NCBI RefSeq assembly: GCF_001194135.2
Contig: NC_069010.1
Location: 8,304,618 to 8,368,617 of the forward strand
DNA length: 64,000 nucleotides
Reading direction: 5' to 3'
Source of the DNA: Octopus bimaculoides
Lineage: Eukaryota
Part shown: in pieces, positions 32,682 to 59,357 of the stretch
How positions within the stretch are numbered: the first letter of the stretch is position 1
Layout of the letters: every line of letters begins with the position of its first letter
The notes under the pieces: generated by a model
What the model was told of the DNA's origin: nothing
What the model saw: the letters and a program-made list of their open reading frames with translations, nothing else
Databases searched by the model: none
Translations under genes and position numbers: made by a program

Positions 32682-33491
32682 GTTTCTGGTATAGACACGA
32701 GGCTGGTAAACTTGGGGGGAGAAGCAAGTTGATGCTTTGCCCCTTCACCTTCTGGGGTGGGTGGGGTGATAAAACAAAGTGGAACTTGGCAGGACTTCAG
32801 CTCTGGAACACACTGCATTTTCTCATGCTCCCTTATCACCACCCNNNNNNNNNNNNNNNNNNNNNNNNNNNNNNNNNNNNNNNNNNNNNNNNNNNNNNNN
32901 NNNNNNNNNNNNNNNNNNNNNNNNNNNNNNNNNNNNNNNNNNNNNNNNNNNNNNNNNNNNNNNNNNNNNNNNNNNNNNNNNNNNNNNNNNNNNNNNNNNN
33001 NNNNNNNNNNNNNNNNNNNNNNNNNNNNNNNNNNNNNNNNNNNNATTTGTTGGAGGTAGATTCAGTTTTTATAATGATAATAATAATATGCATTTCATTT
33101 CAACAAATGAATTTATTAATGATAATAACTTTAACATCTTCATCTTAATATATTAATTATAGATTTCTAATTTAGTTTCCGTTTTGATAACATAGACATG
33201 ATATCAGAAAACAGTAACAAAATTGATTTTAATTAAAAACTTTTAATTTTTGTTGTGTGTATGCGTGGTCATGTGGTTAAGATGTTTGCTTCCCATCCAC
33301 TTGGTTTTTGAGTTCAGTCCCACAGCATGGCACTTTGGCTTTGGGCCCACCAAAGTCTTGAGTGTGGACTTGGTACATTGAAAGTGAAAGAAAGCCATCT
33401 GTGGGCACGCATTTGTGTCTCCTTGTTTTGGTATTACTCAGAATCAAGAGATTAGAAAGGGAACTTCTTAACTACAGAGCAATGCCTACAC

Positions 33492-36500: not shown

Positions 36501-37180
36501 CCCCAACCATCCTCCGTTGCCTCATCCGACACAGACACACATGGGCCACCATCCAGGAGGTGGTCACTCTCAAGGCAACCAAATGAACACTCAGGGAAGC
36601 GGTCATCCAGCCCCTAGTCCAGTCCAAACTCAAGGGCCGTCGTCTCAGCAGGGCCAGCACCCACAGCATCCACCAAGCTCTGGGACGCCACAACCACCAC
36701 AGCCACCCATGAACTTCCAAACGATGAGTATCCAGGGACACCCGCCGCTGCAGGGAAGCCCCCACAACCCGACATCCCCGCCCAGTGTCCACCCGGCGTC
36801 GCTGTCGTACCCTATAACCCCGCACTCGCATATGCAGGCGACCGGTGCTCAAAACCTTGTGCCCGCCAGTGCGCAGGGGCACCCACAGACTTCGGTTACG
36901 CACTCACAGATGCATANNNNNNNNNNCAACCTTTAGTTATGATGCCCCCAACAGCACACCCTCACACAACTCAACATATGCAGCCTCAACAAGTACAGCC
37001 TGGACATCATTTTCAGGGACATCCCATGCACGGTGAGTATTATCATTATTATTGGCCGAGGTCGACTTTGCCTTTCATCCTTCTGGGGTCGATAAATTAA
37101 GTACCAGTTACGCACTGGGGTCGATGTAATTGACTATCATCCTCCTCTAAATTTCACACCTTATGCCTATAATAGAAAGG

Positions 37181-38983: not shown

Positions 38984-41944
38984 GCCAGTGAGCTGGCAGA
39001 ATCATTAGCACACTGGGCGAAATGCTTAGCGGTATTTCATCCACCACTATGTTCTAAGTGGTGGCCCAGTGGTTAGGGCAGCGGACTTGCGGTCATAGGA
39101 TCGCGGTTTCGATTCCCAGACCGTGCATTGTGAGGGTTTATTGAGCGAAAACACCTAAAAGCTCCACGAGGCTCCGGCAGGGGGTGGTGGCGAACCCTGC
39201 TGTACTCTTTCACCACAACTTTCTCTCACTCTTACTTCCTGTTTCTGTTGTGCCTGTAATGCAAAAGGGTCAGCCTTGTCACACTGTGTCACGCTGAATA
39301 TCCCCCCCGAGAACTACGTTAAGGGTACACGTCTCTGTGGAGTGCTCAGCCACTTGCACGTTAATTTCACGAGCAGGCTGTTCCGTTGATCGGATCAACT
39401 GGAACCCTCTCGTCGTCGTAAGCGACGGAGTGCCAACAACATGTTCTAAGTTCAAATTTTGCTGAGGTCAACTTTACCTTTCATCCTTTTTGGGGTTAAT
39501 AAATTAAGTACCAGTTACACACTGGGGTCAGTGTAATCAACTCATCCCCTCCCAACAAATTTCAGGCCTTGTGCCTTTTGTAGAAAGCATTATTATTATT
39601 TTTTTACACAGTTTCTACTCTGTAGGTTGATTTGTTTTTTTTCTTTCCCCTGTGGCTGGCTCAATCACATGTGGTTAGAGCCATACTGAAGTTTCATTTT
39701 GGACACATGTAGGTCTTAGGTGCAGTCCCACACCATGGCACTGTGGGCAGTTCTGCTACAGTCCGGAGCTAACCAAAGTCTTGTTAGTAGATTTGGCTAA
39801 CTGAAAGGAGCCTATCGTTTGTCTGTTGGTTTATTTACTTCCCTGTAACTTAGTAACTTGGTGAATATCCAGTTTAAAAATAAATATCAGGGTTGATTTG
39901 TTTTTGCAGTTCTGGGTTTGAATCAAATCACAGCTAATAAGTACTGCACTGTGGCACCTGGGTAGGGTTTGCTAGACAGAAATTGTGAATCTCATTGTAG
40001 TCACTTCCTCATCATCATTTAACATCCATTGTCCATGCTATTGTCTCAGAAACTGAAAGAAGCCCATTGTGTGTTTCTGTCTGCATTTATCCTCCCCCAT
40101 GCCACTTGACAACCAGTGTTGGTGTGTTTATGTCCCCGTAACTTAGCAGTTCGGCAAAAGGAGACCAATAGAATAAATACTAGGCTTAAAAAGAAAAGTC
40201 CTGAGGTCAGTTTGTTCGGCTAAAAACTCTCCATGGCCAAACGACTGAAACAAGTGAACGACAAAAAAAGATGTAAGCGGATCTCTATGTATCCGTACTG
40301 ACTCGTTAGTGTTTTCATGAATTGTTGTGTTGTGCCATCATTGTCAATTGTGAGTGTTGTACAGTATCGCTTTTCTCCTTTCCAGTCTCCAGCTATTCCG
40401 CTTCTAACCCCTGCATCTTCAAAGGTAGATTAAAAAGACCGTGTTGCTCTCATTACCATATATAATAATAATTATAATAATTATAAAAATAATTAATTTT
40501 GTCTTTTGTTTGTAACTTCATCTGTCTTTTACTAATCAAGAATCTAATTTTAATTTTGACGTCTTGATAATTCATTATTAATATATTAAGGTTAATAACT
40601 TTTTTCTTTTTTTTTCTTTTTTGTGGACGAGGCGAGACAATTTGCCTCGTCTTTTGGAATGGAACTTTTTATTTTTATTTTATTTTCACAACCAAAGCAG
40701 CAGTCTTTGGTTTTTTTTTTTAGTTTTTTTATCTCCAGCTGTTATCATCAGGTGTGTTTTTTTTTTTGTTTTGTTTTGTGTTTCTTTTTTCCTTAAATGT
40801 GTAACTACATAGAAGACTAGCTTGGACCGGAACTAGGACAGTCTGGTCAGACCAAGCAGAATAACATTCTTAACCAATAAAATGTTTCCACGCTCTGGGA
40901 TAGGCAGCTGATGACTTATCACAGATCAAACTGATTGAAACATAGTATAGCTAGAAATATTGTAAAAATACAGTGTTAAGATGACTAGTTTTAATCCAGT
41001 CTTTGATACTGTGTACAGATCTAGGAATAAGATGACAGGTTCTAATCCAGCCTGGTACTATATACATTCCTGGGTATATATATGTGTGTGTGAGTGTGTA
41101 TATATATATATATATATATAATAAGCGCAGGTGTGGCTGTTTGGTAAGAAGATTGCTTTCCTGCCACATGGGTCTGTGTTCAGTCCCATTACATGGCACC
41201 TTGGGCAAGTGACTTCTATAGCTTTGGACCAACCAAATCCTTGTGAATGGATTTGGTAGATGGAAACTGAATGAAGCCCATCGTACATATATGTGTGTCT
41301 GTCTGTGTTTATTTCCCAGTAACTTAGCAGTTCAGCAAAAGAGATTGATAGAATAATTACTAGGCTTACAAAAAATAAGTCCTATGGTCAATTTCTTTGC
41401 CTTAAACCCTTTAAGGCGGTGCTCCAACATGGCCACAATCACATGACTAAAACATCTGAAAGAATGTGCCTGTCTGTCTCTCTGTATTTTCCCCTACCAC
41501 TGCTTGATAACCGGTGTTACAGTGTTTACATCCCTGTAACTTAGCAGTTCAGTGAAAGAGACCAATAGAATAAGTTCTGCTGTTTTGCTCAACTAAAATT
41601 CAAGCCAATCACCCAGCATGGCCACAGTCTAATGATGAAACGAGTAAAAGCTGCAGGGCAGTGAAACTGAACTCTAAACCACAAGGTTGCAAAACTACCT
41701 TCCTTACCACCCGGCCATACTGACGGGGAGAGAGTGGGGTACCTTCATGAAATAACTTGCAAAAAAAACTCTTTGGGGTATCGCGCCAACACGACTATCA
41801 CACTCCAGTGACGAGTGTGTGTGTCTGTGTGTGCATGTATAATGTTTGATGCTAATGATTATATCTTAATTAACTTTAATTATATTTTATTTTCCAGTAC
41901 AATCCCAAGGTGCTCCTGTCCCAACGTACCAACAGAGTCAGTAA
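3575..41944 (+). CDS. ATXN2: Ataxin-2 gene, 5'-partial, 20 coding exons in window
   Basis: Exons 3575-3622, 9846-9882, 10677-10715, 11569-11622, 11905-11976, 12823-12988, 13583-13698, 14017-14105, 14256-14468, 15881-16404, 17027-17155, 18377-18426, 20071-20189, 21381-21444, 22073-22265, 22932-23080, 35767-35890, 36476-37032, 38832-38945, 41898-41944 all have AG/GT ends and chain with compatible phases. The translation contains the LSm domain (EGVYNNSRF..GNPVSIQVKNGNVYEGIL), LsmAD (NGWDPSDMF..STYDENLSQYT..LENGEGEDEEKFAAV), PAM2 (STLNPNAKEFNP) and HPAPSPVQ. Confidence 0.95.
3960..4240. repeat. Compound (GT)-rich minisatellite
   Basis: Reiterated GAGTATGTACAA(A/G)TGTGTGT units. Confidence 0.85.
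4874..5400 (+). mobile_element. SINE family B tandem cluster (2 full + 1 partial) separated by (ATT)n
   Basis: Repeated AAGGCGGTGAGCTGGCAGAATC...GTTCTGAGTTCAAATT...GTCGATAAATTAAGTACCAG...CAGGCCTTGTGCC...GAAAGGATTATT. Confidence 0.85.
6153..6652 (+). mobile_element. Family D (RTE-type 3' tail element), two tandem copies
   Basis: GGTTGGCGTTAGGAAGGGCATCCAGCTGTAGAAACTCTGCCAGATCAGATTGGAGCC...CCCATGCTAGCATGGAAAG.GGACGTTAAACG(ATG)n occurs twice. Confidence 0.85.
8652..8887 (+). mobile_element. Family E MITE, single copy
   Basis: Same internal sequence (GACATTGTAGGGTAGGTGTGAGAGG) with TTAA at both ends. Other copies lie at 23879-24118(-), 31940-32163(-) and 9255-9400(-, partial). Confidence 0.75.
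9846..9882 (+). CDS. ATXN2: Ataxin-2 37-nt exon (R-GNPASNPSRNPV), phase 2-0
   Basis: tttccag acceptor and gtaagt donor. Size and phases match the short pre-LSm exon of vertebrate ATXN2 as I recall it (not verified). Confidence 0.8.
10677..10715 (+). CDS. ATXN2: Ataxin-2 candidate 39-nt symmetric exon (DSLKFGKMRLSPD), phase 0-0
   Basis: tttttag acceptor, gtgagt donor, in frame with both neighbouring exons. Confidence 0.6.
10896..11279 (+). mobile_element. tRNA-derived SINE family A, near full length, with TSD
   Basis: A box TGGCCCAGTGG, B box GGTTTCGATTCC, (CAA)n tail; 12-bp TSD ATGACATTGCAT at 10884-10895 and 11280-11291. Confidence 0.9.
11569..11622 (+). CDS. ATXN2: Ataxin-2 LSm exon 1 (NEGVYNNSRFIYVGVCLL)
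   Basis: tttcag acceptor, gtaagt donor; matches the ATXN2/ATXN2L motif EGVYNNSRM. Confidence 0.93.
11905..11976 (+). CDS. ATXN2: Ataxin-2 LSm exon 2 (GNPVSIQVKNGNVYEGILLTFSYK)
   Basis: 72 nt, ttttag/gtaagt; LSm motif VQVKNGxxYEG. Confidence 0.95.
12372..12670 (-). mobile_element. Family D copy inserted in (TA)n
   Basis: Reverse complement of the D consensus, with (TA)n on both sides. Confidence 0.85.
12823..12988 (+). CDS. ATXN2: Ataxin-2 LSm exon 3 (MDIVLSMAHK...VDLEYAVK)
   Basis: ctccag/gtaagg, phase 0-1; inside ORF 12742-13047. Confidence 0.93.
13583..13698 (+). CDS. ATXN2: Ataxin-2 exon (DNYSESSSRFNGQLGDKDLTPWEG...DSDAS)
   Basis: ttccag/gtaagt, phase 1-0; NG..KDLxPW motif. Confidence 0.92.
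14017..14105 (+). CDS. ATXN2: Ataxin-2 LsmAD exon 1 (NGWDPSDMFRTNYEQFNVISTYDENLSQYT)
   Basis: poly-T cag acceptor, gtgagt donor; diagnostic GWDPxDMF and STYD motifs. Confidence 0.96.
14256..14468 (+). CDS. ATXN2: Ataxin-2 LsmAD exon 2 plus Q9 tract
   Basis: cgcag/gtaggc, phase 2-2; PLERRDTKEYKEREEAAAKLADEIE...EEKFAAVVKPE followed by Q9. Confidence 0.96.
14693..15300 (-). mobile_element. RTE-clade LINE 3' fragment ending in a family D tail
   Basis: Minus strand reads LERNEASMLCWMCNV..WFGHVMQMD..GRPRKT*DEV (decayed RT C-terminus), continuing into the D-type 3' UTR and (GAT)n. Confidence 0.75.
15333..15713 (+). mobile_element. SINE family A, full length, with TSD
   Basis: Near-identical to the 10896 copy; 8-bp TSD ACATGTGT at 15325-15332 and 15714-15721. 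Confidence 0.9.
15881..16404 (+). CDS. ATXN2: Ataxin-2 low-complexity exon (S/N/T runs, HHH-Q7); contains a 10-N gap
   Basis: ttccag/gtgagt, phase 2-1; ORF 15798-16484 stays open across the gap 16129-16138. Confidence 0.85.
16482..16768 (+). mobile_element. Family D copy
   Basis: D consensus tail with repeated GTGCCRGTGGCACGTAAAAAG head units. Confidence 0.8.
17027..17155 (+). CDS. ATXN2: Ataxin-2 exon (SSEKEDKEILSNRSHIVP...RRNSNSK)
   Basis: ttgtag acceptor, weaker donor AAG|gttatt; phase 1-1 fits both neighbours. Confidence 0.7.
17317..17669 (+). mobile_element. Family D copy with three head units
   Basis: D consensus with an (ACG/ATG)n tail. Confidence 0.85.
18377..18426 (+). CDS. ATXN2: Ataxin-2 exon (DRASEIEAYKTFSSHIK)
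   Basis: caacag/gtaagt, phase 1-0; resembles the ATXN2 IDDLKKFxxDFRL helix. Confidence 0.85.
20071..20189 (+). CDS. ATXN2: Ataxin-2 charged K/E-rich exon
   Basis: tttcag/gtgagt, phase 0-2; LTGSYKDKEKGEKGERQEKSEE... Confidence 0.88.
21087..21292 (+). mobile_element. Family D copy inserted in a family E MITE
   Basis: D consensus flanked by E(-) sequence at 20997-21085 and 21293-21320. Further D pieces lie near 3790, 9010(-), 9410, 22410(-), 26290 and 37910. Confidence 0.8.
21381..21444 (+). CDS. ATXN2: Ataxin-2 PAM2 exon (KVKNSTLNPNAKEFNPKSYPQ)
   Basis: tttcag/gtatgt; canonical PABP-interacting PAM2 motif LNPNAKEFNP. Confidence 0.97.
21546..21922 (-). mobile_element. SINE family A, full length, with TSD
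   Basis: Reverse complement of the other A copies; 12-bp TSD CTAGCAAACTAG at 21534-21545 and 21923-21934. Confidence 0.9.
22073..22265 (+). CDS. ATXN2: Ataxin-2 exon (KHCVQTPTPPRPQTQSP...AAKR)
   Basis: tttcag/gtaatt, phase 0-1; conserved TPTxPRPQ motif after PAM2. Confidence 0.92.
22932..23080 (+). CDS. ATXN2: Ataxin-2 exon (AIVPVPRHDYTAQAAAAAATGPPLLAQT...PYTQ)
   Basis: tttcag/gtaggt, phase 1-0; AAGPP-like motif. Confidence 0.9.
24878..25070. repeat. Compound (GT)n/(AT)n microsatellite, representative of many in the window
   Basis: Directly visible. Similar tracts at 7365-7450, 33495, 43160-43640, 51950-52215 (with (TAGA)n), 54060, 56660-57040, 60110-60345 (with (TATC)n), 63935-64000, and (GTAG)n at 42865-42907. 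Confidence 0.95.
25800..26103. mobile_element. Composite of family C head (+), inverted family C segment (-) and family A 3' half (+)
   Basis: Segments match the C consensus in both orientations, then GAGTGCTCAGCCACTTGCACG...GACGGAGTGC of family A. Confidence 0.65.
26546..26797. mobile_element. hAT(Charlie)-like MITE relic
   Basis: Ends resemble CAGTGGTTCTCAACC...GGTTAAGAACCACTG; related ends lie at 2750-2899 and 20760-20792. Confidence 0.4.
27270..28310 (-). mobile_element. Decayed RLE-type (R4/Dong-like) non-LTR retrotransposon
   Basis: Minus strand, with frameshifts and stops: RVGTY.HWKLWQHYEIP, ENGKATILWD, NRPDIVIKDHQEEK*FLTDISIS, SKYKDLEMEVTR, i.e. the PD..D restriction-like endonuclease region. 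Confidence 0.72.
28940..29366 (+). mobile_element. SINE family B cluster running into an assembly gap
   Basis: Three B heads, two directly after (ATT)n runs. Confidence 0.75.
29367..30261. other. Assembly gap (largest of ten)
   Basis: N runs at 7746-7798, 16129-16138, 19276-19617, 20575-20585, 29367-30261, 32845-33044, 36917-36926, 48949-49700, 56866-56968 and 58076-58753. Confidence 0.99.
33790..34380. mobile_element. Two head-to-head RTE/D 3' ends forming an inverted repeat
   Basis: 33790-34020 (-) and 34081-34380 (+); a 24-bp perfect reverse-complement match at 33994-34017 and 34149-34172. Confidence 0.82.
34563..35233 (+). mobile_element. Three head-to-tail piggyBac-like MITEs (family E) sharing TTAA junctions
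   Basis: About 226-bp unit with ends TTAACCCTTTAGCAT...ATGCTAAA(G/T)GGTTAA; TTAA at 34563, 34789 and 35015. Confidence 0.78.
35767..35890 (+). CDS. ATXN2: Ataxin-2 exon (HLMPMAQGTRLMTQTT...HSAPLY)
   Basis: Pyrimidine tract then AAG acceptor (atypical, so the 5' end is uncertain), gtgagc donor; phase 0-1 bridges the 12.7-kb intron. Confidence 0.78.
36476..37032 (+). CDS. ATXN2: Ataxin-2 H/P/Q-rich exon (HPAPSPVQ); contains a frame-breaking 10-N gap
   Basis: ttaag/gtgagt. Before the gap it reads VPTPHVQHHP...SQMH; after the gap QPLVMMPPTAHPH...HPMH in a shifted frame. Confidence 0.85.
37053..37910 (+). mobile_element. SINE family B head-to-tail array (about 4 copies)
   Basis: Four successive B segments; the first three end in GAAAGGATTATT(ATT)n, the last has the variant tail also seen at 7964-8110. 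Confidence 0.85.
38832..38945 (+). CDS. ATXN2: Ataxin-2 penultimate exon (GSHVHPSNHHMMASQAAAAAIPVST...HFIPH)
   Basis: tgtcag/gtgagt, phase 1-1; IPVST..HF resembles the vertebrate ATXN2 C-terminus. Confidence 0.88.
38980..39595 (+). mobile_element. SINE family B interrupted by a family A insertion
   Basis: B head at 38980-39059 and B remainder at 39441-39595. Confidence 0.85.
39060..39440 (+). mobile_element. SINE family A nested inside a family B SINE
   Basis: 11-bp TSD ATGTTCTAAGT at 39049-39059 and 39441-39451; family B sequence resumes after it. Confidence 0.9.
41123..41650 (+). mobile_element. SINE family C, older copy plus duplicated 3' half
   Basis: Diverged C consensus at 41123-41462, 3' half repeated at about 41490-41650. 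Other partial C copies lie near 6050, 6950, 8940, 14570, 20590(-), 24780, 30780(-), 33260, 39660 and 40045. Confidence 0.75.
41898..41944 (+). CDS. ATXN2: Ataxin-2 terminal coding exon (VQSQGAPVPTYQQSQ-stop)
   Basis: ttttccag acceptor, phase 1, TAA at 41942-41944; a short VQ...QQ-stop ending as in vertebrate ATXN2. Confidence 0.8.
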
Positions 41945-42295: not shown

Positions 42296-42655
42296 CAGGA
42301 GTGGCTCCATGGTAAGTAGCTAGCTCACCAACCACATGGTTCCGGGTTCATCCCCACTGCGTGGCACCTTGGGCAAGTGTCTTCTACCATAGCCTCGGGT
42401 CGACCAAAGCCTTGTGAGTGGATTTGATAGACGGAAACTGAAAGAAGCCCGTCGTATATATGTATGTATATATATATGTATGTGTGTGTATATGTTTGTC
42501 GCGCCAACATCGCTTGACAACTGATGGTGGTGTGTTTACGTCCCCGTAACTTAGCGGTTCGGCAAAAGAGAGACCGATAGAATAAGTACTAGGTTTCCAA
42601 AGAATGTCCTGGGGTCGATTTGCTCGACTGAAGGCGGTGCTCCAGCATGGCCGCA
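42296..42655 (+). mobile_element. tRNA-like SINE family C
   Basis: GGTAAGTAGCT..CAACCACATGGTTCCGGGTTCA.TCCCACTGCGTGGCACCTTGGGCAAGTGTC...GGAAACTGAAAGAAGCCCGTCG, internal (TA)/(TG) run, tail GCGGTGCTCCAGCATGGCCGCAG. Confidence 0.88.
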
Positions 42656-44962: not shown

Positions 44963-45106
44963 TTTGCACACACACATATTATATTACTAGCTCTTTGTAT
45001 CATGTTGAGAAACATTATTTATTTAATCTGTGATATTTATCTATTTTCGTCGCAATAATGTACATTTCCTTCGTCGTTATTTAAATAGCATTTGTTTTAT
45101 TTGCAG

Positions 45107-46909
45107 GCATATATGATGCGGTACGGATATCTAAAATGCAAGCAACATAAACATTCTCCGTACCGTTCACGCTCAAACAGACAGCATGGTCGGCCAGGCA
45201 GTGTACAGCATCAACAGATATTATATAATTGTAATAAAACGAAGGTTATGTTGGCAATCAGCCAGTACCAGAAAAGTTATCACTTGTCCGTGACAGGTAA
45301 GTTAAACCAGGAGACCAAAGAACTGATGTCTGCTTCTCGTTGTGGTAATAAAGACAAAGATGATGGTGTGTACAGGGAGGAACACTTTAATTCAAAAAGG
45401 AAGCACCCTCGTCGACAAGATCTAAGACATGGCCGCGGAAACAGGGCCAATCGACGAATAGATATGAACAAACGACACAATAGAAAAAATATGAACCCGA
45501 TGAGAAAACGCTCAAAACGGGAAGCATTTCACAGATCCCGTTCAAAAATCAAAACGACCACCACAGGGGAGAAGTTTTTAGCGAGGGACAAACGATCCGT
45601 CTCGTCAAATTTATCCCCATTGCTATCTTCTAATTTACCTTTGACTTCCAAGCTGGCTTCTCTCTTGGTGGCGACTTTCTCAAAATTTCGAGCCACTAGA
45701 GGTCGCTGGAAACGGAATACGGCAAATGGTTATTCGACCGTATCCCTGACTGAACACAATAACAATACGGTATCAAATAATACCAAAACGATCGCTAATG
45801 ACACGTTATTAGCCCGTGAGATACTAAACCGTGTTATTGCTGAATCAAATACATCATCATCTAAGACCACAGCGACAAAAGAAACAGTTTCAGAGGGCGG
45901 AGTACGGACTAGTAAAACTGCAAGGCAACACACGGCAAAAGACTTAGCGCCGTCAAAGTTAAATACAATTAGCTCAGAAAACACAACTTCAACATCATCG
46001 CAATCATCACAAACACCCAAACCAATTTCTAATACATCTACTCATACTTCTAATGTAACAAGCACCACAACAACTATAAATAATAATAATAATAATGCAC
46101 GTAAATATGTACAGTTTCAAAACTCACAAACAAAACAAAAATTAAAAACAACAGCAGCAGCAACACCAACAGCAAAATCAATATCAACAAGTAGCAATAC
46201 ATGGCTAGAATATTCTGATGACCATGTACGGACGTTGAGTGACGAGCAGCCATGGAATGAGTCTTGGCTGGAGGAAGCGGTTTCGAATGGTGAAGTTGAA
46301 CGCAAAGGCAGTGAAGGTAGACAAGAGCAGCGGCCATATTTTCACTCGTTCGCTTCTCAATCATCGTCGTCGTCATCGTCATCTTCATCATCATCATCGT
46401 CGTCGTCTACAGCGTACATGTCTTCGTCACGGTCATCTCTTTCGCCAACTTTTACGGCAGTGTCTTCTTCTTCTTCTTCTTCTTCTTCTTCTTCATCGTC
46501 ATCTGAATTTCGGACGAACCCGGACGACAGCAGTGGTTCTGCTGTCCGTGGTTCCACCGATGGTGACCAAATTAGCAAGCGTAGTGTGATCAACTTCAAT
46601 AGTGCCACACGCATTGTAAATAACAACAACAACAACAGCACACACACCAACCACCAACAAAACAATAACATTAACCATAACAATAACAGTAATAACTACA
46701 CAAACAACAGCAACAACGATACAACCACCATTTCTACACATCTTACTACTGCTGCTACTAATGCTACTACGTTTAAAGAATTTCAGTTGGATAGTAGTAG
46801 TAGTAGTAGTAAGTCTAATACAGATGAGATTCTCGAACACGTTTGTAATGGTAAGGAGAGATGTTTTAGTAACCCAAGCACTAGCAACAACAATTGTAAA
46901 TGTAACCTT

Positions 46910-46944
<35 letters not shown>

Positions 46945-48626
46945 CAAACGAGATAGAAGTAGCGAGAGAGGTAGCGCGAGTAATAGCAGTAACTTATGTA
47001 AGTGCATCGCTATTAACGACGCCAAAGTAAACAACAGCAACACTGTAAGTAGCAGCAGTAGCAGTAGTAGTAGCAGCAGTGTTAAGGGTAACAAAGATAT
47101 TGCAAGCGGGCTGGACTTCGAAACAGGTGTTTATACGACAAAAACGGTTCGAACGAGACCGTTGCGAAGGGGTACGCTGACTAGAAGCTACAGTCAAAGA
47201 CAGAGAGGAAGCACCAGCTCGATTGCTGTAAATAGTAGTAGTAGTAGTGGTGGTGGTGGTGGTGGTAGTAGTAAGGGGAACAGTAGGGATAGCAATAGTA
47301 ATTACTCTAAGTCAATAGCCAATAATAATAATAATTATAATAATAACGAGAAAGATCATGTCAAGGGCGAGACAGAGCTGACATCAAACCCTAAACAAGA
47401 ACCTGTAGGGGCGAGATTAGGCTCTTCTTTGCCGTCATTGCATTCATCATCATCATCGACGTCATCATCATCATCGTCGTCATCATCATCTTCATCCTCA
47501 GAATCATCATCGTCATATATAAGAACTTTTGCTTCATCCTCAACAACAATTGATACGTCATCATCATCATCATCACCAATCACAACACCACCTTCATCTT
47601 CAACACGTGAAAAACTGGCTTTCACATCGGTGCCTCACCTCACATCCGACACAGCTCTTTCGACGACGGCCACCGTGGCCACAGGTAAAAAAACGACTCA
47701 GTCAGAATCGACGACGAAGACAACGACGGCAACAACTCTAACGACAGACGAAGACAGAAGACCCCCCATCGCTACATTAGCGACACCAGTTTTGGGTACA
47801 AACGACCAAGACGTGAATGACGTCATATACTCAGACAGTGACATTAACAATAATAATTATATTAATAATAATAATAATAACAATAATAATAATAATGATA
47901 ACCGAAACTTAAGGTCTTCTCTACCTTTACGTTACACCGAAACCGTTCCAGCTGGGATAAAGTTGGGAGCCATTTCAAAACTTGAAGAATTAACCTCATA
48001 TAATACTAACCAAAATGACAAAAACTATTTAAATGATGGCGAATATAATGTAATTCACCTGAAGAAACTTTTTATCAAATTGCTCAGTCAATCAGAAACG
48101 GCGACACAATCGTCGCCGAAGTTGCCAACAGTGACTTACTCACCGTTTTCTTTCACGACAAAACCAAATATCCAATGGACAGAGCGTCCGCAACCCCCCA
48201 AAACGTCGGCGCCTCATTCCAGGTGGTGGAACCAACCGCATACGATTTCCTATATGCTGTCGGTAATCAAATTCGGACTCAGACCGAAAGAGCTGCAGCA
48301 TCGTACGCGGCAAAATTACCTGCGGGAGACGGCGCGCCGCTTGAAAGAGACTGATCCTCTAATGTACAACGACTCGCCGGTGCATCAACGTAAACGCCGC
48401 TCGCCCGTGGTTAACAAGGTGAACGGGTGGGGACAAATGTTTAAAAAGAAATTGATACGCTGGCGTTTGTTAGATTCGGGATACAGCAACCGCATCCCTG
48501 TGGAAGAGCAGAGAGCTACTCTTACACTCGCCTTCCGGATGTGGAACGAAGTGATTCCCTTAAACTTTGTGGAGGATATTACCAGTCACGTGAAGGATGT
48601 CGATATACATATTGCGTTTGGTCAAG
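45107..48626 (+). CDS. MMP21: MMP21-like matrix metalloproteinase, giant internal exon (prodomain + about 1010-aa insertion + start of catalytic domain)
   Basis: ttgcag acceptor, CAAG|gtaggt donor, 1173 open codons. Motifs: YMMRYGYL, PG-binding-like AISQYQKSYHLSVTGKLNQETKELM, cysteine switch SRCGNKD (45335-45355), furin RKRR (48389-48400), then FKKKLIRWRLLDSGYS..QRATLTLAFRMWNEVIPLNFVED..DIHIAFGQG. That last segment closely resembles vertebrate MMP21 (WRLLGE..LAFRMWSEVTPLDFRED..DIKLGFGRG, recalled from memory). MMP family is certain; the MMP21 orthology is inferred. Confidence 0.88.
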
Positions 48627-50786
48627 GTAGGTTCCTTTTAATATTACTAAGAAATTTTCTCCATTCATCTTCGTTATATATTTTCTTATTTTTTTCTTAT
48701 AACGGCTTTTTCTGTACATCTACAAACGAGGCTCCAAGTCGTAATTAGAACGCCGAATCAATTTTATTCATAGGGGAATTAATTCAATATTTTTATGCAA
48801 AGCTGAATAGCATAGCATCCGGGATAGCAAATTAACCACATGGTTATTACAATTTCCATTCTTACTCACAGCAGTACTTTAATATACTATATGACCATAA
48901 TAAGTTTTAAACCTTTTCAAGATAATTATTTAAAAAAATAATAATTATNNNNNNNNNNNNNNNNNNNNNNNNNNNNNNNNNNNNNNNNNNNNNNNNNNNN
49001 NNNNNNNNNNNNNNNNNNNNNNNNNNNNNNNNNNNNNNNNNNNNNNNNNNNNNNNNNNNNNNNNNNNNNNNNNNNNNNNNNNNNNNNNNNNNNNNNNNNN
49101 NNNNNNNNNNNNNNNNNNNNNNNNNNNNNNNNNNNNNNNNNNNNNNNNNNNNNNNNNNNNNNNNNNNNNNNNNNNNNNNNNNNNNNNNNNNNNNNNNNNN
49201 NNNNNNNNNNNNNNNNNNNNNNNNNNNNNNNNNNNNNNNNNNNNNNNNNNNNNNNNNNNNNNNNNNNNNNNNNNNNNNNNNNNNNNNNNNNNNNNNNNNN
49301 NNNNNNNNNNNNNNNNNNNNNNNNNNNNNNNNNNNNNNNNNNNNNNNNNNNNNNNNNNNNNNNNNNNNNNNNNNNNNNNNNNNNNNNNNNNNNNNNNNNN
49401 NNNNNNNNNNNNNNNNNNNNNNNNNNNNNNNNNNNNNNNNNNNNNNNNNNNNNNNNNNNNNNNNNNNNNNNNNNNNNNNNNNNNNNNNNNNNNNNNNNNN
49501 NNNNNNNNNNNNNNNNNNNNNNNNNNNNNNNNNNNNNNNNNNNNNNNNNNNNNNNNNNNNNNNNNNNNNNNNNNNNNNNNNNNNNNNNNNNNNNNNNNNN
49601 NNNNNNNNNNNNNNNNNNNNNNNNNNNNNNNNNNNNNNNNNNNNNNNNNNNNNNNNNNNNNNNNNNNNNNNNNNNNNNNNNNNNNNNNNNNNNNNNNNNN
49701 GAATGATGGGTATGCCACAATTTCATACTAGAACCATTCTAACTATCTGGTGAACCTTGCAAAAATCCGAATCAATAAATTAATGAATTTGTATCATTAA
49801 GCATTAGAGCGGCTGGGGGTGGGGTCGTAGAAATGATAGAACTGTAGGAGTGGGGTGGGTGGGGTGGACTAAATATCATGTAACATTTAGTTGCATACAT
49901 GTCTTTACCTTATGGCTTCAAATCTCACAACGGTTGACTTTGACTTTCAACTAATGAAGGGCTCAGAAACTAATTACCATTTATGTTTTAAGATAGTCAT
50001 TTGACTATGTTTCTTGTATACAAATATGAGAACTCGTGTCAAGATACATAGTACTACTGTTGAACACATGCTAGAATAATCAGGTTCTGTACATATTGTG
50101 TGTGAAGTGTCATCCGTCTTCATGTCTTATGGAACCGAAAAGCCCCAAACTTCGCTACAGTATTATTTGGGCAGATAAAATGAGATCTCTTGGTTACCTG
50201 TAATACCTCTTGCTAGTTTCACAAGAATTTTATAAAAATTGAGCTCAATACATCAATCAATTTCATACCGCTCTTTGCTTGTCAAGAAGTACCAATGAAT
50301 AGCTAAGGTCAACTGAGCCATTGATAACGTAGCGTCTAAAATTGAAACTCGAAACTTTGTTTCTAATAAACAAATATCAATCATTCACTTTCAGTCTCTC
50401 TCTCTCATTAATCATTCACTTATCGTTATGTTGATCTGAGTTTCAAAATAAATGAGGTTAGCGACATATCCACAAGCGTTTGATATTACTATTCACATCA
50501 TTTGTTTCTTGATCACAGAAACGAACTCAAACTTCTGGGATTGATTTACTTTTCTTTCTGAAGGACTTTATGGAAATGTTTCTGCGATCTGATGATGCTC
50601 TTTTTTGGCAAAATAGACAGTTAACTGTCCACTCGTATTTCGTGACTTCTTATTCACTACAGGAGACGAAATGTCTGTGAGCAAGACACAATTCTATTTT
50701 GCTTCATCTCATAGACTTTTCAGAAATTGTTTCGTTTTAAAAAGCACTCACATTTAGTTACCGTTGTACAAACATCTAGTTACCGT

Positions 50787-54862: not shown

Positions 54863-55018
54863 ATGCGGCTGTGTGGTAAGTAGCTTGATTACCAACCACA
54901 TGCTTCCGGGTTCAGTCCCACTGCGTGGCATCTTGGGCAAGTGTCTTCTACTATAGTCTCGGGCCGACCAAAGCCTTGTGAGTGGATATGGTAGACGGAA
55001 ACTGAAAGAAGCCCGTCG

Positions 55019-55057
<39 letters not shown>

Positions 55058-55275
55058 CTGTGTGTGTGTTTGTGGGTCTGTGTTTGTACCCCTACCATCG
55101 CTTGACAACCGATGTTGGTGTGTTTACGTCCCCGTACATTTGCGGTTCGGCAAAAGAGAGCGATAGAATAAATACTAAGCTTACAAAGAATAAGTCCTGG
55201 GGTCGATTTGTTTGACTAAAGCTGGTGCTCCAGCATGGCCGCAGTCAAATAACTGAAACAAATATAAAAAGAATA
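54863..55275 (+). mobile_element. SINE family C, full length
   Basis: Near-identical to the 42296 copy; preceded by (TA)n. Confidence 0.88.
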
Positions 55276-55715
55276 AAAGAAATATATACATATACATGCA
55301 TACATATGTATATATATGCGCGCGCGTGAGTGACTGTATCTATGATCATGGGAATCGGAGTATTTTTCTATCGTCTTCTAAAAATGGAGGAAGTAAAAAC
55401 CTCTTTTAAAACACTCCTACGTTACCATTGCACGCATTCGTGCCCATCTGACTCCGAGAGCGGTGGCAATCCCGAAGAATGTTCTATTCTTGAGAAAGCT
55501 TCTCCTCTATCTTCTGTCTGCGGCATCTGTGCGAACATATTTCGCCCGACCCATCTTTTGAACTCTTCAAACGCTGCAATGCATCCATGCTTTATTTCCC
55601 GCCTACCTTTGGTCATGCATTCTTGTGCTCGCTTGTTTTTCTGTTCACCAGGGTTTATATCTCTCTAAGTTTTCTTGTCACTCTAATACTATTACCCTCT
55701 CTTTCTCTCTCTCTT

Positions 55716-55753
<38 letters not shown>

Positions 55754-56683
55754 AAATATCTACATGGTGAGGGATTTCCGTTATGCGACGATCAGGATTC
55801 AGCTGTTCAATCAACTAGATTATCTTGCTCTTGTGATAATCCACCTGTGAGTGGCTAGACATTATACCCTAAACGTAATTCGCGGGTTTACCGTAATGTT
55901 GTTCACAGCCAGATTCAGCACGGCACATTGTGTGAGAAAACAGTACTTACACAAATTACACAGTCTGCTAAACTAAACGGGCTTCTATGCAGTTTCCCTC
56001 TACCTAATTTCACTCACAAGATATGACAATTTACATATAAGAAATTTACAATCAAGCATGACGAATGCGTATTTCCTTCATCGACTGCCAAACGGATATC
56101 ATTATGGTTTCGACACTCGGGCAGTATATTCATATACATATGTGTGTGTGTTTAGTTATAATAAAATCAATTTTAACATTTGCTTGAATGGGGACTCCAT
56201 ACTTTTGTAGCGTACAAATTTATTCTTCTCCAACAAGAATAGTGACTTCGAAGTTTCGGTCAGCTAAGCTACCATCAGGCTCGCACGCACATATACACAC
56301 ACGCGCGCGGATTTTGTATGTATGTAGGTACAGGCATACTTTAATTACGTCATTTCGGATAACGTCATTTTCGACTTTGCGTCGTATTTTTTTAAAAGAA
56401 ATTAATGAGCAAAAATAGACCCCAACATCAGCAGATTTTTCCGACTGTACGTTGGTTTCAGCAAGTATACTTAAAACATAAAAGTTATAAAATCTCCGAA
56501 AGTGTAAAATCAAATGAAATAGATGTGAAAATTAATACAAATCATTTATTAAACCGATTTAGGCGACTAAATTTTTTCAAAATATTTTTCGTGTGATGTT
56601 TATTGTCGAGTCGAATCGCATGTCTTGAAGCCAGTTACCGACGCAAGTTGAGTTATGCCTTTATGTGTGTGTGTGTGTGTGTA

Positions 56684-56773
<90 letters not shown>

Positions 56774-56968
56774 CCAAACACCTTGCAGTATTGCTTTTCA
56801 GTATTTCTGCATTGTAATATATAAAATCAGGTGAGTGCACGTGATGTGTGTGTGTGTCCAGAAACNNNNNNNNNNNNNNNNNNNNNNNNNNNNNNNNNNN
56901 NNNNNNNNNNNNNNNNNNNNNNNNNNNNNNNNNNNNNNNNNNNNNNNNNNNNNNNNNNNNNNNNNNNN

Positions 56969-57020
<52 letters not shown>

Positions 57021-58977
57021 ACACACACACACACAACTGAAATAGATAGATACAATTATCAGACGATACACTCTATTACATAACCAGATGGAAAGAACAG
57101 GCGATATATCACGCGACTAACAAAGAAGAGGGGAAAAGACAATATTATTTTTGCCTGTTACTTATGCTTTTATGGTATGTCATGGTTGTAATTTCATTTT
57201 CATGTCAGATACGCTTTAAACAAATGTAAGAAAAATACCGAAAAAGAAAAAGTAAATAGTGTCGGCCCATTGTTTTCAGGGACAAGTAGTGACCCGCTAA
57301 GTTTAGTTCTAACAGAAAAATCAACGTTATTCCATCAATATTCCCAGAAAAATCACTTCAACAGAAGCAACTCAATGTCACGAGAAGGAATTGATGCATA
57401 AAATGGTTTAGTATCATATTAGTAATAATAATTACGATTTGGTACATTAACACAAAGCTTCAAATTTTGTAGATGGTTGCTATTGATGTTATTTAACCCT
57501 AAATCAGCATAGATTAAGGAGATATATGACAAAGGTGTTCCGTTTTGGGGTTAATGTTTTGTTTGTTTTTCAGAGTATATGTTTAGCAATACATTTGCGG
57601 ATACGTCTTTTTGTTTGTTTTTCTTCTTGTTAATGACCGCAGGGATTGATTGAAGAGCTCTTTGTCTGTTGTATCGCTACTAAGACCCTGTGATTAATTT
57701 ATGCAGGAAAAAGTTATCCATTGCACAAGATTGGTTTGAATTCAGAAAATAGAAAGTAAATACAGCAACGCATTTAGCGTAGCGCCCAGCCATCTTGGCC
57801 ACTGCACACCTTTAATAAAACTTATATAGTTGTGGTCGTCGTTGTCACCATTCGGCCGGGCGACTTGTCCACTCTATTGCAAGCATTCAGATCAGGTCGC
57901 CAGTCCCAACATACCTTTTTCCCTTCTTCCCACCGATCATGAAGACCCTAAAAAGGGTCAAGGGTATTTCCTTCACTTCTGGTTAAACCCCACCCCCCAC
58001 CCCCCAAAAAAAGAAGAAACTATAAATAAATATTTTGAATTTTTTGATATTATTATTATTATTATTATTATTATTNNNNNNNNNNNNNNNNNNNNNNNNN
58101 NNNNNNNNNNNNNNNNNNNNNNNNNNNNNNNNNNNNNNNNNNNNNNNNNNNNNNNNNNNNNNNNNNNNNNNNNNNNNNNNNNNNNNNNNNNNNNNNNNNN
58201 NNNNNNNNNNNNNNNNNNNNNNNNNNNNNNNNNNNNNNNNNNNNNNNNNNNNNNNNNNNNNNNNNNNNNNNNNNNNNNNNNNNNNNNNNNNNNNNNNNNN
58301 NNNNNNNNNNNNNNNNNNNNNNNNNNNNNNNNNNNNNNNNNNNNNNNNNNNNNNNNNNNNNNNNNNNNNNNNNNNNNNNNNNNNNNNNNNNNNNNNNNNN
58401 NNNNNNNNNNNNNNNNNNNNNNNNNNNNNNNNNNNNNNNNNNNNNNNNNNNNNNNNNNNNNNNNNNNNNNNNNNNNNNNNNNNNNNNNNNNNNNNNNNNN
58501 NNNNNNNNNNNNNNNNNNNNNNNNNNNNNNNNNNNNNNNNNNNNNNNNNNNNNNNNNNNNNNNNNNNNNNNNNNNNNNNNNNNNNNNNNNNNNNNNNNNN
58601 NNNNNNNNNNNNNNNNNNNNNNNNNNNNNNNNNNNNNNNNNNNNNNNNNNNNNNNNNNNNNNNNNNNNNNNNNNNNNNNNNNNNNNNNNNNNNNNNNNNN
58701 NNNNNNNNNNNNNNNNNNNNNNNNNNNNNNNNNNNNNNNNNNNNNNNNNNNNNTATATATATATATATATATATATACATAGTTTTATAAATTTTTAATG
58801 TAATTAAACCTCTGTAACCACAACTGAAAGGATTTTATAATATACACACACGCATATATATATTTATTTATTTATTTATTTATTTATGGGTTTCACAAAG
58901 AATCTCGGCATAGTAAGATTGTGGCGTTTAACATTCTCCAAACTGTCCTATGCTTGAATGTTCACAAAGTAGATGCT

Positions 58978-59021
<44 letters not shown>

Positions 59022-59357
59022 ATATATATATGCACACTGACATGTACAGTGTTCATTTCACCTTGTAACGTGTCTGTAAGCTTGATATTTTATCTATGTA
59101 GCATAACATGACAGACAGACAGATATAATATATACACAGTAATTCTCAGGATATTCGCTATGTTAAGTCTCTTGGATAGCTCAATCAGACGATCATATTT
59201 CGAAATTATACCAGTCTTTCTACACATTTTTTGCTGGCATTTCTTGTAAATCCGGCTTATCTTTCAAATCGTTTACATCATTTACCCCGTAAAGAAGAAG
59301 CTGATGCTTTTAAGCCTTCTCATCTATATAAGCTCATTTCTGACAAGTGACTACATA

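What the first reader, a model, noticed from the sequence alone, without database searches (positions are those of the whole stretch)
45356..48388. MMP21-like protease with an approximately 1010-aa low-complexity insertion between cysteine switch and activation site
Seen: SRCGNKD ends at 45355 and RKRR starts at 48389, leaving 3033 nt (1011 codons) of stop-free sequence rich in S, T and N. Three features argue it is coding rather than an unspliced intron. It has no stop in 3 kb of AT-rich DNA. Every (AAT)n and (AGT)n run sits in a phase that avoids TAA/TAG. It lacks the dinucleotide microsatellites and SINEs that fill all flanking introns. Established: MMP prodomains are about 80-100 aa, and vertebrate MMP21 carries only a short insert at this same position. 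Inference: this is a mucin-like, probably O-glycosylated and disordered giant prodomain. It could act as a spacer, tether or secretion/latency regulator and may be cephalopod-specific.
Basis: partly seen in the sequence, partly recalled or inferred. Interest (0 to 1): 0.85.

Follow-up and report, generated by a model that had tools for sequence, protein, structure and literature searches.

The report
Giant disordered propeptide linker in octopus MMP21
One 3.5-kb exon of the octopus MMP21 protease gene really does encode about 1,000 extra serine-, threonine- and asparagine-rich amino acids between the latency motif and the activation site; this is an extreme, squid-and-octopus version of a linker that also varies widely in length in other animals.

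Summary
SRCGNKD ends at 45355 and RKRR starts at 48389. The 1011 codons between them have no stop, inside a 3657-nt open stretch; the next longest in the window is 579 nt. The block is one exon, 45107-48626, of the Octopus bimaculoides MMP21 orthologue.

It is coding, not an intron:
- Argonauta hians and an unnamed, probably decapodiform cephalopod have the same exon with the same splice sites. The exons are 3520, 3988 and 3310 nt, all 1 mod 3, with no stops.
- Octopus-Argonauta DNA similarity is colinear inside the exon and stops at its borders.
- All 26 tandem repeats in the exon have periods divisible by 3, against 77 of 216 outside.
- A spliced transcript contig from another cephalopod carries at least 300 in-frame linker codons joined to the catalytic and hemopexin domains.

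It is the known MMP21 insertion, reported as 20-44 aa in the vertebrates compared, hugely expanded. Gastropods have about 110, so sizes of 930-1170 aa look coleoid-specific among the taxa sampled.

The interior is proline-poor, lacks PTS repeats and is unconserved between octopods and the third cephalopod. "Mucin-like" and any function remain untested. It is most likely a disordered spacer removed at the furin site.

The parts
45107..48626 (+). One internal exon (3520 nt, ending in codon phase 1) of the MMP21 orthologue. It is the only exon of the gene found in the window.
   Evidence: Acceptor ttgcag|GCA and donor CAAG|gtaggt. Homologous exons with the same splice sites occur in Argonauta (L001 55150-59137, 3988 nt) and in a third cephalopod (L003 10031-13340, 3310 nt). 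tblastn with the orthologues finds no other exon in the window.
45107..45334 (+). C-terminal part of the prodomain (PG_binding_1-like helices)
   Evidence: Pfam PG_binding_1 at exon aa 48-74, E=0.0016, below the curated cut-off. It is 86% identical to Argonauta with dN/dS 0.07.
45335..45355 (+). Cysteine-switch motif SRCGNKD, a variant of PRCGxPD
   Evidence: The same SRCGNKD occurs in Argonauta and in Biomphalaria MMP21-like; RCGN.D occurs in other protostome relatives.
45356..48388 (+). The 1011-codon insert: the expanded MMP21 propeptide linker
   Evidence: No stops. No Pfam domain. S 20.9%, T 11.8%, N 11.2%, P 3.8%; 22 N-x-S/T sequons; net charge +43.
45356..45751 (+). Basic segment at the start of the insert, conserved between the two octopods. 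It contains RSKR (45509-45520), RDKR (45584-45595), a predicted helix SKLASLLVATFSKF, and RWKR (45704-45715).
   Evidence: 57% identical to Argonauta, dN/dS 0.25. The colinear blastn match 45091-45718 ends here. Helix 182-198 in the model. RSKR and RWKR are kept in Argonauta but not in the third cephalopod.
45752..48121 (+). Low-complexity S/T/N core with short octopod-conserved islands. These include the Cys motif at 46838-46906, TTKTVRTRPLRRGTLTR at 47135-47185 and REKLAFTSVPHLTSDT... at 47606-47689.
   Evidence: Poly-Ser, poly-Asn and poly-Gly runs of 5 or more residues make up 12% of the insert. Only repeats with periods divisible by 3 occur. Colinear blastn islands match Argonauta. There is no recognisable conservation with the third cephalopod. 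No secondary structure is predicted for aa 244-982.
48122..48388 (+). Conserved pre-furin module, containing PHSRWWNQP (48212-48238) and RQNYLRETARRLKETDP (48308-48358)
   Evidence: 73% identical to Argonauta, dN/dS 0.12. Conserved in both non-octopod cephalopod sequences. Alignable with the R-P-W-K-R ... R..YL..I..LK.EDP module of other lophotrochozoan MMP21 linkers. Predicted helices 1045-1056 and 1060-1082.
48389..48400 (+). Furin-type activation site RKRR (cleavage expected before Ser at 48401)
   Evidence: The position is shared with R-x-K/R-R sites of all MMP21 relatives examined.
48401..48626 (+). N-terminal ~75 residues of the mature catalytic domain
   Evidence: Pfam Peptidase_M10 at exon aa 1113-1172, profile positions 3-57 of 159, E=5.4e-5, 23.6 bits against a cut-off of 24. 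It is 96% identical to Argonauta with dN/dS 0.04.

Best explanation
Window 45107-48626 is a single coding exon of the Octopus bimaculoides orthologue of matrix metalloproteinase-21. The exon encodes, in order:
- the end of the prodomain with the cysteine switch (SRCGNKD);
- a 1011-residue Ser/Thr/Asn-rich linker, probably intrinsically disordered;
- a conserved, largely helical pre-furin module of roughly 60-90 residues;
- the proprotein-convertase site RKRR;
- the first ~75 residues of the mature catalytic domain.

The linker is the MMP21-specific propeptide insertion, expanded in coleoid cephalopods to about 930-1170 residues. The expansion lies in the variable segment between the cysteine switch and the conserved pre-furin module. 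It grew and keeps changing through in-frame trinucleotide-repeat slippage and in-frame insertions and deletions.

Shown: it is exonic, kept open in three cephalopod lineages, and carried (at least its last ~300 codons) in a spliced mRNA of a relative.

Inferred: it is translated as part of the zymogen. Because it lies upstream of RKRR, it is cut off together with the prodomain by a furin-like convertase in the secretory pathway, so the mature enzyme lacks it. Selection acts mainly on reading frame, hydrophilic composition and a few short islands. The linker is probably a tolerated, possibly glycosylated spacer rather than a folded domain.
For: - Open frame: 3657 nt against a next-best 579 nt in the window; the other five frames of the insert carry 26-133 stops.
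- The flanks match PG_binding_1 and Peptidase_M10.
- The nearest database proteins are Argonauta hians "matrix metalloproteinase-21-like" and an adjacent "hypothetical protein". These turn out to be the two ends of one uninterrupted 4395-nt open frame in the Argonauta genome.
- A third cephalopod genomic contig (P0013/L003) has the same exon with a 928-aa linker.
- Splice sites are homologous, and the exon lengths of 3520, 3988 and 3310 nt are all 1 mod 3 with no stops.
- blastn between the window and the Argonauta locus gives colinear unique matches only inside the exon, ending at 45091 and 48629. The introns share only dispersed repeats.
- dS is about 0.9-1.4, so neutral sequence would be scrambled. 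dN/dS is 0.04-0.07 in the flanks and about 0.3 in the alignable insert columns.
- Tandem repeats in the exon have periods divisible by 3 in 26 of 26 cases, against 77 of 216 outside.
- Logan contig L002 is spliced: catalytic and hemopexin domains are contiguous. It is open in frame from its first bases through about 300 linker codons and starts in poly-Ser.
- The literature describes the insertion (20-44 aa) between PRCGXPD and RXKR as a hallmark of MMP21 (PMC2656525).
- The AlphaFold model has pLDDT below 50 and no secondary structure across aa 244-982, with helices only in the conserved islands.
Against: - No RNA evidence from O. bimaculoides itself could be obtained. The protein databases returned no Octopus-genus proteins at all.
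- The transcript evidence covers only the last ~300 codons of the linker, in a different and unnamed species.
- An alternatively spliced in-frame "exitron" inside the linker cannot be excluded.
- The AlphaFold run had little power. The alignment held 5 sequences, and the truncated folded flanks also scored 56 or less.
- The dN/dS estimate of about 0.3 is biased downward, because columns were chosen for alignability, and two islands gave 0.8-0.9.
- Similar lengths (930-1170 aa) in lineages that diverged long ago hint at selection for length, which a purely neutral spacer model does not predict.
- Furin cleavage, secretion and glycosylation are inferred from the family, not shown here.
Confidence: 0.85

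Rival explanations
1. The linker is a functional module selected in its own right. It would be a heavily glycosylated, extended domain that tethers or spaces the zymogen, controls its secretion or latency, or is released as a separate product.
For: - A length of about 930-1170 aa is retained in three cephalopod lineages.
- The composition (S/T/N-rich, hydrophilic) is retained.
- Several short islands, including a C-x5-C-x10/11-C-K-C motif, are conserved between Octopus and Argonauta with overall dN/dS about 0.3.
- There are 22 N-x-S/T sequons and 33% S+T.
- RSKR and RWKR sites near the start of the insert are conserved between the two octopods. Together with RKRR they could release the core as a fragment of about 890 aa.
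- Long inserts arose independently at the same site in salmonids, cyclostomes, a skate and a tunicate.
Against: - The interior shows no recognisable conservation between octopods and the third cephalopod.
- Proline is only 3.8% and there are no PTS tandem repeats, unlike true mucin domains.
- Frame preservation is explained by the need to translate the downstream catalytic domain.
- Gastropods, a nemertean, a horseshoe crab and tetrapods manage with 20-143 aa.
- Nothing here tests glycosylation or function.
Confidence: 0.3
2. All or most of the 3 kb is an intron or retained intron that is removed from the mature mRNA, so the long open frame is not translated.
For: - No O. bimaculoides transcript was available.
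- Donor-like GTAAGG and GTAAGT motifs exist at 46851 and 46998.
- The Argonauta annotation did not join the two ends into one model.
Against: - With dS about 1, an unconstrained 3-kb stretch would carry about 59 stops per 1011 codons. None is seen in any of three species, and exon lengths stay 1 mod 3.
- Repeats have only periods divisible by 3.
- DNA conservation is colinear inside the exon and absent from the true introns.
- Donor-like motifs occur at chance frequency (7 seen, about 6 expected), and there are only 2 in the Argonauta exon and 1 in the third cephalopod's. An equally strong CAG|GTAAGT sits inside the conserved prodomain coding sequence at 45297.
- The spliced transcript L002 retains about 300 linker codons.
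Confidence: 0.05
3. An in-frame part of the linker is alternatively spliced (an exitron), giving long and short zymogen isoforms.
For: Nothing direct. Long low-complexity exons are a common setting for exitrons, and GT...AG pairs are abundant in 3 kb.
Against: No candidate splice site is conserved between species. Every segment stays open in all three lineages, which would not be required of a constitutively removed part.
Confidence: 0.1
4. The insert is an assembly artefact, with low-complexity sequence wrongly joined between two exons.
For: The window has ten N-gaps, one of them 320 nt downstream of the exon.
Against: There are no gaps inside 45089-48745. Two further, separately deposited assemblies, from other cephalopods, show the same continuous exon.
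Confidence: 0.01

Closest known systems
Vertebrate MMP21 (Xenopus XMMP, human MMP21): a furin-activated secreted matrixin with a propeptide insertion
   Same: Same order of parts: prodomain with cysteine switch, insertion, R-x-K/R-R site, catalytic domain. The start of the catalytic domain is recognisably similar (…KKK.IRWRLL…LAFRMWNEVIPLNFVED…). The orthologues from Argonauta and a third cephalopod have HEIGHVLGLNH, the extra Cys in the catalytic domain, no hinge, and hemopexin repeats. The insertion is described as a family hallmark (PMC2656525). In Xenopus the propeptide is also encoded in exon 2 (bioRxiv 10.1101/2024.10.13.618030).
   Different: The insertion is 1011 aa here against 20-44 aa in the vertebrates compared in that paper. 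The switch motif is SRCGNKD rather than PRCGVPD. The composition is S/T/N-rich rather than proline-rich.
Gastropod and other lophotrochozoan MMP21-like proteins (Biomphalaria glabrata XP_055878666.1, Nucella lapillus KAL8587048.1, Tubulanus polymorphus XP_074641352.1)
   Same: The Biomphalaria sequence has the same SRCGNKD switch; the Nucella and Tubulanus motifs are close variants (LRCGNAD, KRCGNKD). They share the conserved pre-furin module (R.W.. … R..YL..I..LK.EDP … R.KR|S) and the same catalytic start.
   Different: Their switch-to-furin distance is 79-112 aa. In cephalopods the variable segment ahead of the pre-furin module is expanded about ten-fold or more, and the dibasic R-P-W-K-R of that module has become S-R-W-W-N.
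MMP21 with long repeat inserts in salmonids, cyclostomes and a skate (Oncorhynchus kisutch XP_031671681.1; Myxine glutinosa UPI00358E6322; Rhinoraja longicauda XP_078264411.1; Lampetra fluviatilis CAM9637948.1)
   Same: Large low-complexity expansions (278-530 aa) at the same position, between the cysteine switch and the furin site.
   Different: Those inserts are built from clear tandem peptide repeats: TTATDRPHQSPPP in salmon, GPLDGIGEVEATPSDD in hagfish, GQLDQS.TNK in the skate. They are half as long or less. The cephalopod insert has no long-period repeats, only homopolymer or microsatellite runs between unique stretches.
Mucin-type PTS domains
   Same: High Ser+Thr (33%), hydrophilic, no predicted structure, in a secretory-pathway protein.
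   Different: Proline is only 3.8%, asparagine 11%, and there is no tandem PTS repeat unit. O-glycosylation was not tested.

Membership tests
MMP21 (matrixin family M10A, furin-activated secreted type) | Prodomain with a cysteine-switch motif (PRCGxPD or a variant) | tested here: met
   SRCGNKD at 45335-45355, preceded by a weak PG_binding_1 match, E=0.0016. The same variant motif occurs in proteins annotated as MMP21-like from Biomphalaria, with close RCGN.D variants in Tubulanus and others.
MMP21 (matrixin family M10A, furin-activated secreted type) | Insertion between the cysteine switch and the furin site | tested here: met
   A 1011-aa insertion. The literature gives 20-44 aa for the vertebrates compared (PMC2656525). 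Family members surveyed here range from 19 to 530 aa outside cephalopods.
MMP21 (matrixin family M10A, furin-activated secreted type) | R-x-K/R-R proprotein-convertase site directly before the catalytic domain | tested here: met
   RKRR at 48389-48400, aligned with R.KR of all relatives. Actual cleavage was not tested.
MMP21 (matrixin family M10A, furin-activated secreted type) | Peptidase_M10 catalytic domain with HExxHxxGxxH | tested here: inconclusive
   Only the first ~60 residues of the domain are in the window (Pfam E=5.4e-5, 23.6 bits, cut-off 24). The zinc-binding exon lies outside the window. The Argonauta protein, 96% identical over the shared part, and the L002 transcript have HEIGHVLGLNH.
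MMP21 (matrixin family M10A, furin-activated secreted type) | Unique extra cysteine in the catalytic domain, no hinge, C-terminal hemopexin repeats | not testable with these tools
   These parts lie outside the window. In the orthologues P0001 and P0003 they are present: AHQNC…, YGVC directly followed by the hemopexin domain, and PF00045. The features are as listed in PMC2656525.
MMP21 (matrixin family M10A, furin-activated secreted type) | Signal peptide | not testable with these tools
   Exon 1 is not in the window. In Argonauta it lies 45 kb upstream and encodes a hydrophobic N-terminus, MGLAKFFLIYSSLCTVCFLPF.
MMP21 (matrixin family M10A, furin-activated secreted type) | Closest relatives are MMP21 rather than other MMPs | tested here: met
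   Every named top hit checked carries an MMP21 or MMP21-like annotation: Argonauta, Biomphalaria, Tubulanus, Tachypleus, Palaemon, Styela, Oncorhynchus and Myxine.
Mucin-like (PTS) domain | Pro/Thr/Ser-rich tandem repeats | tested here: not met
   P 3.8%, S+T 33%, N 11%. TRF finds only microsatellite-type repeats with periods of 3-21 nt.
Mucin-like (PTS) domain | Dense O-glycosylation | not testable with these tools
   No predictor or experiment was available. Only counts can be given: 22 N-x-S/T sequons and 33% S+T.

The most novel reading that the evidence does not exclude
The linker would be a selected, functional part of the zymogen. It would be a highly glycosylated extended chain of about 100 kDa, either excised as a separate product (octopod-conserved RSKR/RWKR upstream and RKRR downstream) or anchoring pro-MMP21 so as to limit where it is activated. 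This is relevant because vertebrate MMP21 is proposed to act as a flow-transported laterality signal (bioRxiv 10.1101/2024.10.13.618030). Repeated independent expansions at this one site in cephalopods, salmonids, cyclostomes, a skate and a tunicate would then reflect recurrent tuning of the range or timing of MMP21 release.
Probability: 0.15. Interest if true: 0.65.

Novelty: new variant of a known kind. Interest (0 to 1): 0.4.

Why it matters
The comparison also shows something more general. The MMP21 segment between the cysteine switch and the furin site is a recurrent site of low-complexity expansion across animals, ranging from 19 to about 1,170 aa.

That matters in two practical ways. 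First, gene models are easily broken there: the Argonauta annotation splits the gene in two. Second, it bears on how MMP latency works, because the cysteine switch would have to hold the active site shut across a 1,000-residue flexible tether. The finding opens no long-standing question by itself, and the likeliest reading is a tolerated disordered spacer that is discarded on activation.

Tried and rejected
- A homologue search with the whole exon returned nothing. The 8000-candidate word filter was swamped by low-complexity words. Repeating it with the flanks only worked.
- A third homologue search, using the linker of the third cephalopod with homopolymers trimmed, aimed to find more transcript fragments. 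It found only the query itself.
Argonauta was used instead.
- tblastn for the other MMP21 exons in the window was negative, even at E=50. The gene extends beyond both ends of the window or into gaps.
- A nucleotide-level test of whether indels are multiples of 3 was ambiguous. Of 25 gaps in blastn matches, 15 were multiples of 3, and the 1-2-nt gaps fall in repeat runs where alignment is arbitrary. The test was dropped in favour of total exon length and stop counts.
- I first thought the octopod RGRWKRN corresponded to the lophotrochozoan R-P-W-K-R island. The alignment shows that island corresponds instead to PHSRWWN in the pre-furin module, so I rejected the first idea.
- AlphaFold, used as a disorder test, was weakly informative. 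Mean pLDDT was 35 and the flanks were also low.
- Pfam scans of eight other long open frames in the window gave nothing meaningful, and no tRNA genes were found.
- Paper searches for SRR9970008 and for MMP21 in octopus or cephalopods found nothing. The species of L002 and L003 therefore remain unnamed, and "decapodiform" is my inference from their similarity.
Full report
**1.

The open stretch is 45089-48745 (3657 nt). The next longest stop-free stretch in any frame of the window is 579 nt.

The other five frames of the same 3033 nt have 26-133 stops. From base composition the chance of an open frame of this length is about 3e-27. A canonical acceptor (ttgcag|GCA, exon start 45107) and donor (CAAG|gtaggt, exon end 48626) bound the block.

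Pfam recognises only the two ends: PG_binding_1 at exon aa 48-74 and the first 55 positions of Peptidase_M10 at aa 1113-1172. Both fall just below the curated cut-offs because the domains are truncated by the exon borders. An exact-sequence look-up places the window on GCA_001194135.2, CM046630.1. I recognise that accession as the Octopus bimaculoides chromosome assembly; that is my own knowledge, not a tool result.

**2. It is coding sequence, not an intron**

*Other cephalopods.* The nearest database proteins are two adjacent Argonauta hians models. One is a 308-aa "hypothetical protein, partial" matching the N-terminal part of the exon. The other is a 587-aa "matrix metalloproteinase-21-like" matching the C-terminal part. 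In the Argonauta genome (L001) these are the two ends of one uninterrupted 4395-nt open frame. That exon has the same acceptor and donor (55150-59137, 3988 nt) and a 1167-aa insert.

All three exon lengths are 1 mod 3 and none has a stop.

*Conservation pattern.* Synonymous divergence between Octopus and Argonauta is about 0.9-1.4, so unconstrained sequence should be unrecognisable. Accordingly, blastn between the window and the Argonauta locus finds only dispersed SINE-like repeats outside the exon. Inside it there are seven colinear unique matches, and they stop at 45091 and 48629. An unconstrained stretch of this size and composition would hold about 59 stops.

*Repeat periods.* All 26 tandem-repeat rows in the exon have periods divisible by 3, against 77 of 216 elsewhere in the window. 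Argonauta shows the same pattern in 39 of 40 rows and the third cephalopod in 4 of 4.

*Repeat phase.* All seven (TAA)n/(TAG)n runs are in the one phase that reads Asn or Ser.

*Transcript evidence.* A 2236-nt Logan contig (L002, run SRR9970008, found in 5 contigs) is clearly spliced, because the catalytic and hemopexin domains are contiguous. It is open in frame from its first bases, through about 300 linker codons homologous to those of P0013, and it begins in poly-Ser, where the assembly evidently broke.

However, GTRAG motifs are at chance frequency (7 seen, about 6 expected), and the Argonauta and third-cephalopod exons hold only 2 and 1. The site at 46851 has no counterpart in the Argonauta sequence, and 46998 is just the codons of a Cys-Lys-Cys motif. 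An equally good CAG|GTAAGT sits in the conserved prodomain coding sequence at 45297.

**3. Anatomy of the insert**

The composition is S 20.9%, T 11.8%, N 11.2% and P 3.8%. Net charge is +43, there are 22 N-x-S/T sequons, and 12% of residues lie in homopolymer runs of 5 or more.

Between Octopus and Argonauta there are conserved islands:
- A basic start segment (aa 84-215) with RSKR, RWKR and a predicted helix SKLASLLVATFSKF.
- A C-x5-C-x10/11-C-K-C motif (46838-46906).
- TTKTVRTRPLRR (from 47135).
- REKLAFTSVPHLTSDT (from 47606).
- A strongly conserved pre-furin module (48122-48388), 73% identical with dN/dS 0.12.

dN/dS is 0.04-0.07 in the flanks and about 0.3 over 400 confidently aligned insert columns. 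Two islands give 0.8-0.9. The insert estimate is biased downward because columns were chosen for alignability.

Against the third cephalopod, only the prodomain, the pre-furin module and the catalytic start are conserved. The interior shares composition but no recognisable sequence.

An alignment with linkers of gastropods, a nemertean and seven unnamed single-exon fragments shows how the expansion arose. In these relatives the linker is a short variable acidic or S/T-rich segment followed by a conserved module (R-P-W-K-R … L..L … R..YL..I..LK.EDP … R.KR|S). In cephalopods that module is intact next to RKRR, and the expansion lies in the variable segment.

AlphaFold on the exon, with a 5-sequence alignment, gives mean pLDDT 35. 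It predicts no secondary structure for aa 244-982 and helices only in the conserved islands. Because the truncated flanks also score low, this is consistent with disorder but not proof of it.

**4. Comparison with the family**

An exhaustive profile-free search with the transcript-derived protein found 68 representatives at E<1e-30. I measured the switch-to-furin distance in those carrying both motifs and looked up their names:

| Organism | Switch-to-furin distance (aa) |
|---|---|
| Tubulanus | 79 |
| Tachypleus | 98 |
| Biomphalaria | 107 |
| Nucella | 112 |
| Palaemon | 143 |
| Styela | 251 |
| Lampetra | 278 |
| Oncorhynchus nerka | 280 |
| Rhinoraja | 383 |
| Myxine | 524 |
| O. kisutch | 530 |
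| Third cephalopod (P0013) | 928 |
| Octopus | 1011 |
| Argonauta | 1167 |

The O. kisutch insert is made of 13-aa TTATDRPHQSPPP repeats. [quoted passage not shown] It also lists the furin site and an extra catalytic-domain cysteine (PMC2656525). In Xenopus the propeptide is targeted in exon 2 and is removed to give a 49.8-kDa mature enzyme (bioRxiv 10.1101/2024.10.13.618030).

So the site of the insert is a known family trait. Its length here is the largest found, about twice the next. Within molluscs the two gastropods have about 110 aa, so the ~1000-aa state looks coleoid-specific among the taxa sampled. Nautilus was not available.

**5. Mechanism**

*Shown:* the block is exonic, kept in frame, transcribed in a relative, and placed between the cysteine switch and RKRR.

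*Inferred from what is known of furin-activated MMPs:* the zymogen is made with the linker, and a convertase cuts after RKRR in the secretory pathway. The prodomain and linker are then discarded, so the mature enzyme is an ordinary protease of catalytic and hemopexin domains.

Because the linker lies upstream of the catalytic domain in one exon, selection on the enzyme alone enforces an open frame. Frame conservation therefore proves translation but not a function for the linker. I judge a tolerated, disordered, probably glycosylated spacer most likely. It would have grown by trinucleotide slippage, since the Ser runs use TCN in some runs and AGY in others.

A selected role such as tether, secretion control or released fragment remains possible at about 0.3 for any selected role. 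The retained length and the octopod-conserved islands and dibasic sites are the arguments for it.

**6. Verdict**

The "mucin-like" label, the functional claims and the short-vertebrate-insert premise are not supported.

It is a new variant of a known kind. No paper in the searched library mentions it. Interest is moderate, at 0.4.

Noticed in passing
L001 10001-65890 (Argonauta hians BAAFZT010000037.1): The deposited annotation splits the MMP21 orthologue into two genes: a 308-aa "hypothetical protein Ahia01_000677500, partial" and a 587-aa "matrix metalloproteinase-21-like". The genome has one uninterrupted exon (55150-59137) joining them, so the low-complexity linker seems to have broken the gene model. 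Exon 1 lies 45 kb upstream.
   Followed up: yes
window 6053-6139, 25861-25956, 30761-30894, 41133-41298, 42301-42470, 54874-55065: Copies of a dispersed SINE-like repeat of about 110-190 nt, often followed by a (TA)/(GTAT) microsatellite. The same element is multi-copy in the Argonauta locus. None lies in the exon. ARAGORN finds no tRNA gene in the window.
   Followed up: partly
P0016, P0047, P0018, P0025, P0057, P0035 (Oncorhynchus kisutch, O. nerka, Myxine, Rhinoraja, Lampetra, Styela): Independent expansions of 250-530 aa occur at the same MMP21 propeptide site, each built from a different peptide repeat (TTATDRPHQSPPP; GPLDGIGEVEATPSDD; GQLDQS.TNK; Thr-rich). The site appears to be a recurrent hotspot for low-complexity growth across animals.
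   Followed up: partly
window 46838-46906 and 46991-47008: A small cysteine motif, C-x5-C-x10-C-K-C, lies inside the otherwise low-complexity insert, followed in Octopus by a second CKC. Argonauta has C-x5-C-x11-C-K-C. It is not seen in the third cephalopod. Its significance is unknown.
   Followed up: partly
window 45509-45520 (RSKR), 45584-45595 (RDKR), 45704-45715 (RWKR): Three further R-x-K/R-R motifs lie near the start of the insert. RSKR and RWKR are conserved in Argonauta but not in the third cephalopod. If used, they would separate the cysteine-switch prodomain from the linker.
   Followed up: partly
window 7746-7798, 16129-16138, 19276-19617, 20575-20585, 29367-30261, 32845-33044, 36917-36926, 48949-49700, 56866-56968, 58076-58753: Ten assembly gaps (runs of N). 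They explain the very low G+C bins and several spurious long "ORFs" in the mechanical list. One gap starts 322 nt after the exon's donor site.
   Followed up: no
window 48212-48238 compared with other lophotrochozoan linkers: The dibasic R-P-W-K-R (a furin-like motif) found in seven of ten non-cephalopod linkers in the alignment is replaced by S-R-W-W-N (R-R-W-W-N in P0013) in all cephalopod sequences. A possible second cleavage site of the ancestral linker therefore seems to have been lost.
   Followed up: partly
P0010 (1156 aa, source not looked up): An MMP21-like representative carries a repeat array of about 400 aa (…DTSTHDPxSL…) upstream of the prodomain, in addition to a 175-aa linker. 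A low-complexity expansion has thus also arisen at a second position, ahead of the prodomain, in this one MMP21-type protein.
   Followed up: no
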